From the IMG/VR virus record IMGVR_UViG_3300020154_000003, positions 186,001 through 250,000 of that record: DNA of 64,000 bases; one strand, 5' to 3'. Below the pieces are notes generated by a model that was not told where the DNA came from, searched no databases, and saw only the letters and a program-made list of their open reading frames with translations. Below are positions 4,145 through 63,859 of the stretch, piece by piece. Every line of letters begins with the position of its first letter. Positions within the stretch are counted from its first letter, which is position 1. The position numbers were made by a program, and so were the translations under genes.

Positions 4145-4206
4145 TGGTGAAGGGAGAGGGAATCGAACCCCCGATCAAAAACTCTAACCAACTGAGTTAT
4201 CCCTTC
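4145..4206 (-). ncRNA. 62-nt tRNA-like RNA lacking the entire anticodon arm
   Basis: GAAGGGA/TCCCTTC acceptor stem + ACCA, D arm ACTC-AGTTGGTTA-GAGT, 8-nt linker TTTTGATC, T arm GGGGG-TTCGATT-CCCTC. Confidence 0.8.
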
Positions 4207-18777: not shown

Positions 18778-19143
18778 TTGACGATAATGAGTGATCACAT
18801 TATGAAGAAGCCTTGCAAGCATTGTCCCTACAGGAACGATGTTAAACCCTTTCTGACACCAGAGCGGGGTGAGGAACTTGCATATCTTGCTCAGAACCGT
18901 TACAACTCATTTCCCTGCCATAAAACCACTGTATTCGATGAAAATAGCGAAGAAGGCGGTATGATGGCGACCAGTGATTCTAAAACTTGTGCTGGTTTTG
19001 TTACCTTGCAATGCAACGAAGGCATGAGCATACCCAAGGGGTTCGAACCAGCTTTTGAAATCGTCTATACTGATGCTTGCGAAATGTCACAAGCCTATAG
19101 TGAGGAATATCGGGATGAAGCCCTCAATCCACAACATTCTTGA
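18778..19143 (+). CDS. DUF6283-like Cys/His metal-binding protein
   Basis: PCKHCPYR...FPCHK...CAG motif set. Confidence 0.5.
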   Translation: MTIMSDHIMKKPCKHCPYRNDVKPFLTPERGEELAYLAQNRYNSFPCHKTTVFDENSEEGGMMATSDSKTCAGFVTLQCNEGMSIPKGFEPAFEIVYTDACEMSQAYSEEYRDEALNPQHS

Positions 19144-19157
19144 ATTGTTTACGTATA
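19133..19157 (+). promoter_or_regulatory. Phage promoter AAC-N16-CGTATA
   Basis: Upstream of ORF 19181. Confidence 0.75.
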
Positions 19158-20051
19158 AGTAATTACAAACGCAAGAAACCATGAAAGATTTATTTTATTC
19201 TCACCACGAAGGCATCCTTTTTTACATTGGTGGTTATGAAGATACCACCAACGTTAAGACGATGATCTCCATCCTGCAGAATAATTACAACTTCTTCGAG
19301 AAGCTTGCTAAGGTGAAAGAAATTCACACTGACGTTATCACCAAATCCAGTAGGTACAAGAACATGCGAGTTTATTGGGCTGTAACTTCCGAGAGACCTA
19401 TAGACGCATTCGTGATAGGTGCGAATGATTCTTCAGATAATCTGAAAAAATGGACGATGCGTAAATGGTTGGAGAATTAAAGTATGCACAGCGAGAAGTT
19501 TTTATGGAGAAAAAATAATCCTTACGGTTTAAGTAAACCTGAGGCTGAACACATTGAACATTTCATGCAAAGGATGTTGGAAAGATTCAATATCATCATT
19601 TCCATAGGTGAATACTACGCCATCATAAACGACATCCAAAACAATAAGGCGAGACATATCTACAGCACCAATTCCTCAAATGGTATTTTTTCAATCAACT
19701 TGCATGGTCAAGAGGTTTGGGTCATGTATGGTGGGGTATCTGATGACATACCTGCTCGATTGAAAACTGCAATAAGACCACACGATCAATTTATCCTGCC
19801 TGATGCTTTATCCCACGTCTATAATCAAACGAGTTTTAGTAAGGCTGTTTATGAAGTTATTGAACAATTCAAACAACTCTCAGAGCAGATCGATCTAAAT
19901 GATAAGAAAATATTTTTTATGACCAGTAAAGCACATCCAGTACTCAAGAAAGGTGCTTTGATGTATAAGCAATACGGAGAGAATTGTGACAAACTACATT
20001 TTTATTCGATGGCTATCCGACATTTAATTCGAGAAAATCAAGTAAAAGTGT

Positions 20052-20076
20052 AACCTTTTACTGCTGGTTCCGTATT
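20052..20076 (+). promoter_or_regulatory. Phage promoter, GTAACCTTTT subclass
   Basis: AAC-N16-CGTATT upstream of ORF 20098. Confidence 0.65.
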
Positions 20077-22252: not shown

Positions 22253-22789
22253 ATGAAAACTAACGCAAATCCGAAAAACGTAATCAAAGCCGTTGAAACA
22301 GTTTCAAAGAACATCTATGGTGGAAACGTAATCTTCAGGCGGTATCCTGAGAAATTGACCAAGAACGTGATTCGCTTCACCTTGAAGACAAAGGATGCCA
22401 ATAAACCCGGATCGATGGTCACCAAAGAAGGGTTGAAGCAACCCAAGGCCAACTGGCAGGTGCATGAGGACGTGATGAAGGAGTTATTCAAACTCGAACC
22501 CAAGCCAAACATCTACGTGGACACCACATATGGTCGCCAGTACAACGAAAACTTCTCCACGACCGAAGTTTCTGAGGCAGTTCGCGAAGAAAATACTGAA
22601 GAAACTGAGGCTGCGGAAGAATCTTCCCAAAAATCCGAAACTCTTACACGTAAAGAGAAAACCCCCCGAAACGCTCGTAAAGTTGCGAAGGTAACTAAGA
22701 AGCAGCAAAAAATGGAGTTTTCCAAGTTCGTTAAAGCCCTGAAATATGTCTTCGATCACAAAGAACTTCTTGACGAAGTGGAGGCATAG
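22253..22789 (+). CDS. Hypothetical protein with an acidic then basic low-complexity tail
   Basis: E/T/S-rich linker followed by a K/R-rich segment. Confidence 0.65.
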   Translation: MKTNANPKNVIKAVETVSKNIYGGNVIFRRYPEKLTKNVIRFTLKTKDANKPGSMVTKEGLKQPKANWQVHEDVMKELFKLEPKPNIYVDTTYGRQYNENFSTTEVSEAVREENTEETEAAEESSQKSETLTRKEKTPRNARKVAKVTKKQQKMEFSKFVKALKYVFDHKELLDEVEA

Positions 22790-22816
22790 CAACTATAAAA
22801 GCATTTTCTGCAATCT

Positions 22817-22849
22817 AACCCTTGATATTACCTATCAAGGGTTTTTTTT
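22817..22849 (+). terminator. Rho-independent terminator
   Basis: AACCCTTGATA/TATCAAGGGTT + T run. Confidence 0.85.
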
Positions 22850-23270
22850 GGTCTATATCGATTAACCCTTTACATTTGTTAATGTCAAACAGCAGCAGTA
22901 TATTTACCACTGTATTTACCACTTAATAACCTATATTTTTTATGACAAAAACTAGTAACAGCAAAGGGGCTTCGGGCAACTGCAATGAACAAGAATTCGA
23001 TTTACTCTGCAATTATGGAGTGGTCGTGGCATCCAGATCAATTGTAGTTGAAAATGACGAGAGGGACAAGTATAGATACTCCCTATACAAAGTTCTCGAA
23101 CCATTCCCAACATTCGATGAGTATGTTAGGGGTGAAGAGTTTGACGAAGGTGAATTGATTGTGAATTGTAGGACGATGGATGAAATTCTTTTCGCTCAAA
23201 ACAAATATAAAATACAAGTAAACTCTCCCATATTGGTATAGGTGAAAGAAACAAGTTCACAAATCAAAAC

Positions 23271-23302
23271 ACCTCTTATCTAGCCCAATAAGAGGTTTTT
23301 TT
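23271..23302 (+). terminator. Rho-independent terminator
   Basis: ACCTCTTAT/ATAAGAGGT + T run. Confidence 0.8.
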
Positions 23303-23317
23303 ATGCGCTGTTATTAA

Positions 23318-23346
23318 AACAATTTTGAAAAGTATACGTATATTTG
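23318..23346 (+). promoter_or_regulatory. Phage promoter AAC-N16-CGTATA overlapping a TATATTTG -7 element
   Basis: Directly upstream of the ~440-nt structured RNA. Confidence 0.75.
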
Positions 23347-23349
23347 TGC

Positions 23350-23797
23350 ATAGGCTGCTAAAACAGCATAGATAGAATCCCGGAGGGATTGCTGGACGGT
23401 TGATCGGTTAGTTTAGATAGGATTTTAAAACATGCCTCCCGAATGAGGCAGAAGCGGGTGACAACCCCGCACGATCAGAGTAAAACATATGTTCTAATAG
23501 AAGGATGCCTGACTTTCATCAGGAGGTATCGGGTGAACCAATTCCCGGTTATGTTGAAATAAAGACCGATAGTACGAATCCGGGTGCAAAGTCCTGATAA
23601 ACGGCATAGCGAGTGTTGTAAACAGGCAGGCGGGAATCTCGCTTACATACCCGTTGGGATGGCTCCCGTTGACAAGCTGCAGGCATGTTAGTGAGTCAAT
23701 GACACAAAATGGGTTAGAGGTGACAGTTGATGGAACCTTAAAGTTGGTGGGAGTCCAACATTAAAGCCATCGGGGAGTAATCTTCGGTGGCTTTTTT
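23350..23797 (+). ncRNA. Candidate ~440-nt highly structured ncRNA
   Basis: No ORF of 60 aa or more, raised GC, many hairpins (AATCCC/GGGATT, TGCCTC/GAGGCA, GCGGG/CCCGC, CCTGA/TCAGG, GTTGG/CCAAC), own promoter and terminator. Confidence 0.7.
23763..23797 (+). terminator. Rho-independent terminator
   Basis: AAAGCCATCGGGGA-GTAA-TCTTCGGTGGCTTT + T run. Confidence 0.8.
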
Positions 23798-23832
23798 AAA
23801 TACAAATTTCCACACTTAACCTATTTATAGTC

Positions 23833-23925
23833 ATGAAAAGATTTATCTGGACTCTTATTGTCATTGTGATGGTACTGGCTACAGTTGCTGCTTGCAGCCC
23901 GCACACTTGCCCTACATATCATTAA
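23833..23925 (+). CDS. 30-aa micro-lipoprotein, not in the ORF track
   Basis: MKRFIWTLIVIVMVLATVAA|CSPHTCPTYH*; lipobox VAAC; preceded by TATTTATA. Confidence 0.65.
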   Translation: MKRFIWTLIVIVMVLATVAACSPHTCPTYH

Positions 23926-24078
23926 TTAGCTGATTGCCCACGGTGGTAAAACAGTTACGAACCCGTTCAACTCAGTTGTAGCGGGTTTTGCCATTTTATA
24001 ACATCCTTAATTTACTGTTAACTATTTTTTACAAAATCAGCGATCCTGATAAATATACCTAACGTTATTGCCAACTAA

Positions 24079-24103
24079 AACAATTTCCTTAACTTTGCGT
24101 ATA
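24079..24103 (+). promoter_or_regulatory. Phage promoter AAC-N16-CGTATA
   Basis: Upstream of membrane ORF 24135. Confidence 0.75.
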
Positions 24104-24444
24104 AGTTAACAAGTTCACGAAACAAAAAAATAAAATGGGTTTCCTCTTAATTTTAGGTATTTTCATCCTCATGATCCTCTGGAATGCATTTTCATGGGGA
24201 GTCGTATTCTTCAATTTTTACAATTGGTTCATCTTCCCTGTATTTGGTTTCGGTATGATGCCAGAAATTGTGTTGAGTCAAGCTATCGGTATTATGTTGG
24301 TAATTGGTCTTTTCAAAAATCATGATGTCGGTACATTAAAGGAAGAGTTCTATGCGAATGATTTCATTAGCAGAATGCTTCTAGGACTTGCCTCACCTTG
24401 GCTAACGTTGTGTATAGGATGGCTCGTAAAAAATACTTTGCTTT

Positions 24445-24588
24445 GAGTGAAGTGGGTGTGTGAAGACGGTGAGTTTTCACGCCCCTTAAAAGTGAGGTGA
24501 GCGAGTTGAGGAAAGGTGATTCGCTATATGCGAAGGGTTGCGATACTACCTTAGAACCAAGTAACACAGTGCTCCCTCAGCTTCATTC
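24445..24588 (+). ncRNA. Candidate ~145-nt structured intergenic RNA
   Basis: Closing stem GAGTGAAGT/GCTTCATTC enclosing GTGTGAAGAC/GTTTTCACGC and GCGAGTT/GATTCGC hairpins. Confidence 0.5.
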
Positions 24589-63729: not shown

Positions 63730-63819
63730 TAGGGGTGAGAGGATTCGAACCTCCACTCTTCGGGGCTTCAGTAATGCAACCACAGCCCCGATGTTTTATC
63801 CAGTTAAACTACCTCCCCT
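63730..63819 (-). ncRNA. 90-nt tRNA-like RNA with an extended anticodon arm
   Basis: AGGGGAGG/CACCCCT-A acceptor (imperfect), D arm GTTT-AACTGGATA-AAAC, 8-bp stem TCGGGGCT/AGCCCCGA capped by 16 nt, T arm GGAGG-TTCGAAT-CCTCT. Confidence 0.75.
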
Positions 63820-63834
63820 GTAATCATATGCAAT

Positions 63835-63859
63835 TATACGGAGAATAATGTGAATTGTT
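63835..63859 (-). promoter_or_regulatory. Phage promoter AAC-N16-CGTATA driving the tRNA-like + giant RNA unit
   Basis: Exact spacing; 15 nt upstream of the tRNA-like 5' end. Confidence 0.75.

What the first reader, a model, noticed from the sequence alone, without database searches (positions are those of the whole stretch)
23350..23797. ~440-nt ornate RNA with dual promoter, own terminator and mutually exclusive pairings
Seen: an ORF-free, GC-richer unit with an upstream terminator, overlapping AAC/CGTATA and TATATTTG promoters, and a downstream terminator. Nested helices include TGATCG 23401/CGATCA 23472, TATCGG/CCGATA, CGGGT/ACCCG and GCGAG/CTCGC. AACATGCCT (23429) can pair perfectly with AGGCATGTT (23681), competing with the local TGCCTC/GAGGCA hairpin. 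I cannot match it to RNase P, tmRNA, 6S or SRP. Inference: a novel large phage ncRNA, possibly a switch or a multimer-forming RNA.
Basis: partly seen in the sequence, partly recalled or inferred. Interest (0 to 1): 0.78.

Follow-up and report, generated by a model that had tools for sequence, protein, structure and literature searches.

The report
New large structured RNA, soil jumbo phage
A 366-kb soil phage makes a roughly 450-base folded RNA that codes for no protein, matches no catalogued RNA family, keeps its fold in three diverged phage lineages and appears in many soil RNA datasets; what it does is unknown.

Summary
The unit at 23350-23797 is real. It is a separately transcribed, non-coding, structured RNA of about 448 nt on the + strand.

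- **Promoter and ends:** It has one promoter of a class used 41 times in this phage, with predicted +1 at A23350. A 14-bp intrinsic terminator closes it.
- **Coding:** All six frames are closed in all three lineages.
- **Expression:** In three independent soil metatranscriptomes, contigs cover only the RNA, not its flanks.
- **Conservation:** In a close relative the RNA differs by about 1.5% while flanking genes differ by 8-12%.
- **Homologues:** Two diverged homologues were reached through the upstream 99-aa gene. They preserve the helices through many two-sided compensatory changes and helix-sized insertions. This includes an intramolecular loop-loop (kissing) pairing, AGCGA:UCGCU, which becomes CGCGA:UCGCG.
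- **Known families:** No Rfam family matches, even at E<=10. The phage carries no SmpB, Ro60, reverse transcriptase or TnpB partner gene.

The "dual promoter" is one promoter. Two of the four named helices are not conserved. The 9-bp "mutually exclusive" pairing is at chance level and is absent from both homologues. No conserved antiterminator exists.

Best reading: a new family of large, stable, trans-acting phage RNA, in the same general category as GOLLD and ROOL. Its function is unknown.

The parts
23271..23303 (+). Intrinsic terminator of the upstream 99-aa gene (hairpin 23271-23296 plus T run). It insulates the RNA unit from upstream transcription.
   Evidence: Found by the terminator scan. 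Identical in L063. Lineage M has a different hairpin plus T run at the equivalent place.
23318..23344 (+). Single promoter of the phage-wide class AAC-N16-CGTATAWW: AAC 23318-23320, CGTATA 23337-23342, -10 hexamer TATATT 23339-23344.
   Evidence: 41 sites in the genome against about 8 expected, spacing 16 in 36 of 41. ACGTATATTT is invariant in W, L and M.
23350..23797 (+). The ncRNA, about 448 nt. Predicted +1 is A23350. In 9 genes with this promoter class the ATG starts exactly 5 nt after the hexamer, so the A of that ATG is the 6th base after it, the same offset as A23350 (leaderless mRNAs). The 3' end lies in the U tract after the terminator.
   Evidence: Metatranscriptome contigs cover 23365-23711, 23395-23589 and 23395-23584. 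The G:U pairs in covarying helices fit only the + strand.
23354..23390 (+). Two variable 5' hairpins: H1 23354-23357/23364-23367 and H2 23376-23381/23385-23390.
   Evidence: Both hairpins are kept in L063 with different sequence, and H2 has 2 two-sided changes. Microvariants in relatives (deletion at 23389, 23394 G>T) fall here.
23397..23568 (+). Domain I, closed by Pa 23397-23401/23564-23568 stacked on Pb 23402-23406/23472-23476. Pb encloses hairpins Pc 23434-23449 and Pd 23454-23470. Px 23484-23489/23550-23555 encloses a small conserved UCUAAURGAAGGA element, Pe 23508-23523 and Pf 23528-23549.
   Evidence: Independent MFE folds of W and L give the same topology. Two-sided changes occur in Pa, Pc, Px, Pe and Pf. 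Pa also covaries in M (UAGUU/GACUA), but the rest of M's domain I could not be aligned with confidence.
23589..23601 (+). Invariant linker AAGUCCUGAUAAA at the start of domain II, with no covariation-supported pairing.
   Evidence: Invariant in W, L and M. No partner that could be tested by covariation.
23601..23655 (+). Two adjacent hairpins whose loops pair with each other. Pg' is 23601-23607/23613-23619 with loop AGCGA 23608-23612. Pk is 23629-23634/23650-23655 with a loop holding UCGCU 23639-23643.
   Evidence: Two-sided changes: 2 in Pg', 2 in Pk, 1 in the loop-loop pairing (A:U becomes C:G in M). 98.9% of cells are paired against 32-48% when partners are slid (direct reading). The variant 23616 T>C in relatives turns a G:U into G:C in Pg'.
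23656..23700 (+). Ph 23656-23659/23664-23667, a stem of variable length that is 20 nt longer in L. Pi 23668-23673/23695-23700 encloses a 21-nt loop with invariant CAGGCAUGU (23680-23688).
   Evidence: The closing pair of Pi is C:G in W, U:G in L and G:C in M.
23712..23762 (+). Variable 3' region. A hairpin (GAGGU/ACCUU, 23717-23739) is shared by W and M. L has a larger insert here.
   Evidence: The metatranscriptome contig of X16 ends at 23711, where population variation begins.
23763..23799 (+). Intrinsic terminator of the RNA: a 14-bp hairpin 23763-23776/23781-23794, followed by a U tract.
   Evidence: About -19.6 kcal/mol, and kept in L063 with 2 two-sided and 2 one-sided changes. Pairing probability is 1.0.
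23833..23993 (+). Neighbouring unit, possibly reached by read-through. It is a 30-aa ORF with a lipobox (23833-23925), followed by a nearly invariant two-hairpin 3' element ending in a terminator (23926-23993). No promoter of the phage class lies between the RNA terminator and this ORF.
   Evidence: No RNA-run contig covers it.

Best explanation
This is a stand-alone gene for a stable, highly structured non-coding RNA of about 448 nt. The two diverged homologues are 536 nt and at least 494 nt. It belongs to a small clade of soil jumbo phages.

Transcription starts from one standard phage promoter, with +1 at about A23350, and stops at a strong intrinsic terminator (23763-23797).

The RNA has four parts:
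- two variable 5' hairpins;
- domain I (23397-23568), closed by a long-range helix;
- domain II (23589-23711), the most conserved part, in which two neighbouring hairpins are locked together by a loop-loop pairing and a further hairpin displays an invariant loop;
- a variable 3' region.

Inferred, not shown: it acts in trans through its folded shape. The shape would serve as a scaffold presenting invariant segments with no covariation-supported pairing (AAGUCCUGAUAAA and the loop CAGGCAUGU) to a protein or RNA partner during infection. It would not act as a cis switch. This places it in the same general category as the phage-associated large RNAs GOLLD and ROOL.
For: Non-coding:
- ORFs are at most 45-46 aa, every frame has at least 4 stops in all three lineages, and indel lengths (1, 2, 20, 20, 42...) are not multiples of three.

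Own transcription unit:
- A terminator lies upstream, a promoter of a 41-member class precedes it, and a terminator follows it.

Expressed and abundant:
- 18 runs listed as RNA (not counting those flagged 'probably DNA') from 11 studies hold 16-42% of the RNA's sampled words.
- Eight of these runs were also listed for the surrounding 2.5 kb, and there they hold only 5-7%.
- Contigs from three independent metatranscriptomes lie wholly inside the RNA, with zero depth on the flanks laid in the same call.

Selected:
- In a close relative (run X24) the RNA has 4 substitutions and 2 one-base deletions in 332 nt. Flanking genes show 8-12% differences.

Structure conserved:
- L063 has 69% identity over aligned columns plus helix-sized insertions. 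13 of 93 alifold pairs have two-sided changes.
- Direct reading of 16 helices in W, L and M is.
- In the domain II core, 98.9% of cells are paired, with 5 two-sided pairs, against 32-48% and 0-1 for slid controls.
- MFE z-scores are -2.9 and -5.3.

Strand:
- Many G:U pairs occur in covarying helices, and they would be C-A mismatches on the other strand.

Not a known family:
- Rfam gives nothing at gathering score or at E<=10 for W or L.
- ARAGORN finds no tmRNA.

Not a switch:
- There is no conserved antiterminator.
Against: - Only three lineages are known, and the third (M) is cut off by a contig end. Its domain I could not be aligned with confidence.
- Transcript ends and strand were not measured. 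Only assembled contigs, which carry no direction, could be laid.
- No partner, target or phenotype is known.
- Complements of the conserved unpaired segments are not enriched in the phage genome.
- No promoter of the phage class separates the RNA from the 30-aa ORF downstream, so a leader role is not excluded.
- The trans-acting scaffold mechanism rests on analogy, not on a test.
Confidence: 0.55

Rival explanations
1. It is a long cis-regulatory leader (riboswitch or attenuator) that controls read-through from the RNA promoter into the 30-aa lipoprotein-like ORF at 23833-23925. The 23763-23797 hairpin would be the expression platform.
For: - Same strand as the ORF.
- No promoter of the phage class lies between the terminator and the ORF. 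The next one is at about 24077-24110.
- The RNA, the small ORF and the 103-aa membrane protein gene keep their order in L063.
- Prematurely terminated leaders are often abundant in transcriptomes; this point rests on general knowledge and was not tested here.
Against: - There is no conserved alternative partner for either terminator strand. The best partners lie at non-homologous columns in W and L and are weaker than the roughly -19.6 kcal/mol hairpin, which forms with probability 1.0.
- No aptamer family matches.
- 450-540 nt with two ornate domains is far larger than known leaders for a 30-codon ORF.
- No RNA-run contig covers the well-conserved ORF and 3' element.
Confidence: 0.12
2. It is a conformational switch or self-associating (multimeric) RNA. 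Alternative long-range pairings or palindromic loops would drive the change of state.
For: - A perfect 9-bp complement, 23429-23437 with 23681-23689, exists in W.
- The conserved Pi loop holds the palindrome CUGCAG in W and L.
- GOLLD, ROOL and OLE form homo-oligomers (PMC12286853, abstract seen).
Against: - The 9-bp pairing appears in 19% of shuffles and is broken in L and M, while the competing local hairpin is compensated.
- CUGCAG is CUUCAG in M.
- The one supported loop-loop pairing is explained as an intramolecular contact between adjacent hairpins.
Confidence: 0.12
3. It is a very divergent member of a known RNA class (tmRNA, RNase P RNA, 6S, SRP, group I or II intron, GOLLD or ROOL) that the models miss.
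For: - The size fits tmRNA or RNase P RNA.
- The phage has 54 tRNA genes.
- AAAGUCC and CGCUUA resemble the RNase P CR-I and CR-V motifs. This resemblance was recalled from memory and is a lead only.
Against: - No hit at E<=10 to any of 4227 families in two homologues.
- ARAGORN finds no tmRNA.
- The 3' end is a terminator hairpin, not an acceptor stem.
- There is no conserved tag ORF.
- The RNase P-like motifs are only about 50 nt apart, and the CUCGCU strand is taken by the covarying loop-loop pairing.
- It is not inserted in a gene.
Confidence: 0.04
4. It is not a functional RNA: a spacer that happens to be GC-rich, or a decayed or very short coding gene.
For: None beyond the small number of homologues.
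Against: - Compensatory changes in many helices.
- Far lower divergence than the flanking genes in a close relative.
- Presence in RNA libraries where the flanks are absent.
- Closed frames in all lineages.
Confidence: 0.02

Closest known systems
ROOL RNA (Rfam RF03087)
   Same: A large, multi-domain, stand-alone ncRNA carried by phages or prophages. It is abundant, has no known protein partner, and its function is unknown.
   Different: - No covariance-model similarity.
- Smaller here: 448-536 nt, against about 580 nt for ROOL by my recollection.
- ROOL genes usually lie near tRNA genes (recalled, not checked). This RNA is about 19 kb from the nearest tRNA-like gene and about 85 kb from the tRNA cluster.
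- Oligomeric state was not tested.
GOLLD RNA (Rfam RF01998)
   Same: A phage-borne, ornate RNA with variable peripheral stems around conserved cores.
   Different: - No model match.
- About half the size.
- A different core architecture.
- No tRNA adjacency.
- Known only from three soil phage lineages.
phi29 pRNA (packaging RNA)
   Same: A phage-encoded RNA with its own promoter that acts in trans and uses loop-loop pairings.
   Different: - pRNA is about 120-174 nt, and its loop-loop pairs are intermolecular, forming a ring on the portal (recalled from memory).
- Here the loop-loop pairing joins adjacent hairpins of one molecule.
- There is no sequence or model similarity.
- No link to packaging genes is visible.
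Riboswitch leaders with an intramolecular kissing loop (such as the lysine riboswitch)
   Same: Two hairpins held together by a loop-loop contact, and an intrinsic terminator at the 3' end upstream of an ORF.
   Different: - No aptamer model matches.
- No conserved antiterminator.
- Two to three times larger.
- The downstream ORF has only 30 codons.

Membership tests
Any Rfam 15 family (4227 models) | A covariance-model score at or above the gathering threshold, or at least a consistent weak hit in two homologues | tested here: not met
   Nothing in the region at gathering score. At E<=10 there are only unrelated weak hits, and they differ between W and L063.
tmRNA | A tRNA-like domain formed by the 5' and 3' ends (acceptor stem, T arm) | tested here: not met
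   ARAGORN finds no tmRNA in the window or the genome. The 3' end is a terminator hairpin. A T-arm-like hairpin at 23742-23758 is not kept in L or M.
tmRNA | A conserved tag reading frame. SmpB is its protein partner. | tested here: not met
   No conserved ORF, and all frames are closed. The phage has no SmpB gene, although a host copy could serve.
RNase P RNA | A P4 pseudoknot helix formed between the CR-I and CR-V motifs, plus a specificity domain | tested here: not met
   No RNase P model hit. The AAAGUCC and CUCGCUUA motifs are about 50 nt apart. The latter strand pairs with the AGCGA loop, and that pairing covaries.
6S RNA / SRP RNA | A rod with a central bubble (6S), or the domain IV motif (SRP) | tested here: not met
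   No model hit. The fold is multi-branched, not rod-like.
GOLLD / ROOL | A match to the family's consensus sequence and structure | tested here: not met
   No hit at E<=10 in W or L.
GOLLD / ROOL | Homo-oligomeric RNA-only assembly | not testable with these tools
   Needs a native gel, SEC-MALS or cryo-EM.
Group I / group II intron | Inserted in a host gene with flanking exons, plus the catalytic core (P7 or domain V) | tested here: not met
   It lies between a terminator and its own promoter on one side and a terminator on the other. No intron model hit.
Riboswitch / transcription-attenuating leader | Lies upstream of an ORF on the same strand, with no promoter in between | tested here: inconclusive
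   The ORF at 23833-23925 follows, and no promoter of the phage class intervenes. Other promoter types cannot be excluded.
Riboswitch / transcription-attenuating leader | A terminator that competes with a conserved antiterminator | tested here: not met
   The best alternative partners are at non-homologous positions in W and L and are weaker than the hairpin.
Y RNA / retron ncRNA / omega-RNA | The partner protein gene is present: Ro60 (TROVE), reverse transcriptase, or TnpB/IscB | tested here: not met
   No TROVE, RVT_1 or TnpB-type domain in the 366-kb genome, with the control genomes positive.

The most novel reading that the evidence does not exclude
This would be a previously undescribed class of large ornate phage RNA, the dominant stable transcript of a widespread clade of soil jumbo phages. 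It would act on its own fold, as an RNA-only assembly, a ribozyme, or a decoy that captures a host factor or defence component. Its activity would differ from that of any catalogued RNA.
Probability: 0.25. Interest if true: 0.85.

Novelty: new variant of a known kind. Interest (0 to 1): 0.7.

Why it matters
Few large structured RNAs without a known function exist (GOLLD, ROOL, OLE, raiA). Each has repaid study, most recently by turning out to form RNA-only assemblies (PMC12286853).

This one is a new sequence family with a well-defined gene: promoter, predicted +1 and terminator. It has a compact conserved core of about 125 nt with a covarying kissing-loop. It is also unusually visible in soil metatranscriptomes from 11 studies.

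That gives three things:
- a tractable target for structure determination;
- a marker for a soil jumbo-phage clade that is missing from GenBank phages and nearly missing from IMG/VR;
- a way to ask what giant phages use abundant non-coding RNA for.

Tried and rejected
Homologue searches that found nothing:
- BLAST of the three RNAs against 50,697 GenBank phages gave no match.
- Exact-pattern scans gave only chance hits, checked with nhmmer. These covered viral contigs, metagenome contigs and genome contigs.
- My first patterns included bases that later proved variable, so the single metagenome scan was partly wasted.
- Two hits in jumbo-sized contigs (L089, L091) were AT-rich coding sequence.
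- Neighbour proteins have no IMG/VR relatives.
- Relatives of a 503-aa structural protein lack the RNA by BLAST and by covariance model.
- Remote homologues of the 99-aa protein (P0008, P0010-P0017) sit in contigs without the RNA.
- Model R1 finds nothing real in 5 individually searched bacterial genomes or in 302 genomes sampled from two phyla, centred on a Prevotellaceae and a Sphingosinicella genome. The one 20.5-bit hit lies in AT-rich sequence that reads as an open frame by eye and has none of the family's invariant motifs.
- There is no second copy in the phage.

Interpretations rejected:
- tmRNA, RNase P RNA, 6S, SRP, introns, and Y RNA, retron or omega-RNA (see the membership test).
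- An antisense role against phage genes. Complements of the conserved loops are at chance frequency.
- A Bacteroidota-type TAnnTTTG reading of the promoter.
- AACCTAT as a second promoter class: 11 sites against about 14.5 expected.
- The alifold nested helix AGCGAG/CUCGCU. It is replaced by hairpins Pg' and Pk with a loop-loop contact.

Literature:
- Full-text searches for the invariant motifs found nothing relevant.
- The 2023 IMG/VR survey of viral structured RNAs screened by comparative genomics (abstract and outline only). I infer that a family seen in only one IMG/VR record would not have passed it.

Full report
**Setting.** The window is bases 186001-250000 of a 366,038-bp IMG/VR virus record, judged complete by CheckV. 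The best DNA holder is a soil metagenome. It is a jumbo phage with 54 tRNA genes and no tmRNA. The finding lies among short + strand ORFs of unknown function. None of the ten ORFs tested within about 3.5 kb has a Pfam family. One, the 103-aa membrane protein, weakly matches a PHROG 'membrane protein' family.

**The observation.** All the named strings are at the stated coordinates.
- The region has no ORF longer than 45 aa. Every one of the six frames carries at least 4 stops, both here and in the two homologues found later.
- GC is 46.7% against 38% in the flanks.
- A terminator (23271-23296 plus T7) precedes the unit.
- A 14-bp hairpin (23763-23794, about -19.6 kcal/mol) with a U tract closes it.
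- The + strand folds better than shuffles, with z = -2.9.

**The promoter is single, not dual.** CGTATA and TATATTTG overlap because they are one -10 region.
- The motif AAC-N16-CGTATAWW occurs 41 times in the genome against about 8 expected. The spacer is exactly 16 nt in 36 of 41 sites.
- ACGTATATTT is invariant in all three lineages. The final G of 'TTTG' is not: lineage M has TATATTTA.

**It is an RNA that accumulates.**
- A word index of public runs lists 18 runs as RNA (not counting those flagged 'probably DNA') from 11 studies that hold 16-42% of the sampled words of 23340-23800.
- Eight of these runs were also listed for the surrounding 2.5 kb, and there they hold only 5-7%.
- I laid four runs on 22700-24500. 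The three true RNA libraries each gave one contig lying wholly inside the RNA (23365-23711, 23395-23589, 23395-23584), at least 98% identical, with zero depth on both flanks. The flanks served as the silent-stretch control.
- The contigs end at sites that vary in the population, not necessarily at RNA ends.
- The fourth run, which is probably DNA, holds a close relative. Its flanking genes differ at 8-12% of positions, while the RNA has 4 substitutions and 2 one-base deletions in 332 nt.
- Those changes fall in peripheral hairpin H2, in junctions, or, for 23616 T>C, convert a G:U pair to G:C.

**Homologues.** DNA searches of GenBank phages and exact-pattern scans of viral, metagenome and genome collections found only chance matches. 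The protein route worked.
- The upstream 99-aa protein has a 65%-identical relative on Logan soil contigs. These carry a syntenic 536-nt version of the RNA (lineage L).
- An exhaustive profile search with that protein led to a contig of an NCBI assembly, GCA_040384045.1. It holds a third, much more diverged version (lineage M), cut off by the contig end.
- Other remote homologues of the protein sit in contigs without the RNA.

**Structure.** W and L share 69% identity over aligned columns. L has three helix-sized insertions of 20, 20 and 42 nt. RNAalifold finds 13 of 93 pairs with two-sided changes. The L RNA folds with z = -5.3. Reading each helix in each lineage, with independent folds of the segments, gives the following picture.
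- Two variable 5' hairpins.
- Domain I, closed by Pa (CGGUU/GACCG in W, CCGUU/AACGG in L, UAGUU/GACUA in M) and stacked on Pb. Hairpins Pc and Pd lie inside Pb.
- A junction helix Px (ACAUA/UAUGU in W, ACCUA/UAGGU in L) that holds Pe and Pf.
- Domain II, the best-conserved part.

In domain II, hairpin Pg' closes the loop AGCGA, and hairpin Pk closes a loop containing UCGCU. Both stems covary, and so does the loop-loop pairing: in M it is CGCGA:UCGCG. The alifold 'nested' AGCGAG/CUCGCU helix is therefore better read as a kissing contact between adjacent hairpins.

On the three-way alignment of this core, 98.9% of cells are paired and 5 pairs have two-sided changes. When partners are slid by 1-3 columns, the figures are 32-48% and 0-1. 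Pi closes with C:G in W, U:G in L and G:C in M, and displays an invariant CAGGCAUGU. The linker AAGUCCUGAUAAA is also invariant. The many G:U pairs fix the strand as +. I could not align M's domain I with confidence beyond Pa and a few motifs.

- TGATCG/CGATCA is Pb. It is invariant in W and L, so it is consistent with the fold but untested by covariation.
- GCGAG/CTCGC is the kissing contact.
- TATCGG/CCGATA and CGGGT/ACCCG are not kept in L. Their strands belong to Pf, Pa and Pk.
- The 9-bp AACATGCCT/AGGCATGTT complement occurs in 19% of shuffles. In L the 5' side changes with no compensation, and in M no equivalent exists. The local hairpin is compensated.
- Neither terminator strand has a conserved alternative partner.

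**What it is not.**
- No Rfam 15 family matches W or L, even at E<=10.
- ARAGORN finds no tmRNA.
- The phage has no SmpB, Ro60, reverse transcriptase or TnpB-type gene.
- A covariance model of the domain II core recovers the three members at 128-138 bits. It finds nothing in the rest of the phage, in 16 other viral records, in 5 individually searched bacterial genomes or in 302 genomes sampled from two phyla.
- Full-text searches for the invariant motifs found no paper.

**Mechanism.**
- Shown: a discrete, non-coding, structurally constrained gene whose product is present in RNA libraries where neighbouring genes are not.
- Inferred: it acts in trans as a stable folded RNA that presents its invariant segments, for which no covariation-supported pairing was found, to a partner.
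- I found no enrichment of complementary sites in the phage genome, so a protein or host target is more likely than a phage mRNA.
- The main rival is a cis-acting leader for the 30-aa lipobox ORF that follows, because no promoter of the phage class intervenes. The lack of an antiterminator, the size, and the absence of RNA contigs over that ORF speak against it.
- Multimer formation, known for GOLLD, ROOL and OLE (PMC12286853), is untested.

**Verdict.** This is a real and new RNA family in the known category of large phage-borne structured RNAs. It is currently known from three soil lineages, and its function is open.

Noticed in passing
whole genome; in the window at + 18312, 21545, 23318, 25795 and - 4644, 8747, 11974, 16506, 38136, 43639, 44538, 53427, 62033, 63859: A phage-wide promoter class, AAC-N16-CGTATAWW. 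There are 41 sites against about 8 expected, with a rigid 16-nt spacer. In 9 cases the ATG starts exactly 5 nt after the -10 hexamer, which implies leaderless mRNAs. It resembles a sigma-70 -10 element rather than the Bacteroidota TAnnTTTG motif.
   Followed up: partly
genome 89-126 kb (outside the window); anticodon CTA at genome 123540-123613 and 125586-125659: 54 tRNA genes, including two with anticodon CTA (amber suppressors). These could point to TAG read-through or recoding in part of the genome.
   Followed up: no
window 4148-4206 (-) and 63730-63818 (-): Two tRNA-like genes that default ARAGORN misses. The first lacks the anticodon arm in the Rfam alignment, and ARAGORN with introns allowed instead proposes a 997-nt intron. 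The second has a 13-22-nt insertion in the anticodon loop, and a promoter of the phage class starts at 63859 just upstream of it.
   Followed up: partly
window 23833-23993 (+): A 30-aa ORF with a lipobox (...LATVAAC...; VATLASC in L063) and a conserved C-terminal CSP.TCPTY. It is followed by a 3' element that is almost invariant between lineages and folds into two hairpins, the second a terminator (z = -3.5).
   Followed up: partly
window 24135-24446 (+): A 103-aa protein that looks like a three-pass membrane protein. It is 94% identical between lineages W and L, while the 99-aa protein upstream of the RNA is only 65% identical. It has a weak phrog_2169 'membrane protein' match and no other relatives among 5.8 billion proteins.
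   Followed up: partly
window 19143-20049 against L063: About 900 nt, holding ORFs 19181-19480 and 19484-20053, are present here but absent from the otherwise collinear L063 contig.
   Followed up: no
window 23979-24077: A 97-nt stretch between the small ORF's terminator and the next promoter is missing in lineage L. In the relative in run X24 it is replaced by 17 nt.
   Followed up: no
P0014 (709 aa) and P0018 (1160 aa): Residues 49-83 of the 99-aa upstream protein (the segment EPFPTFDEYV.GEEFDEG) recur as 4-7 repeats in large unrelated proteins. This suggests a repeat module.
   Followed up: no
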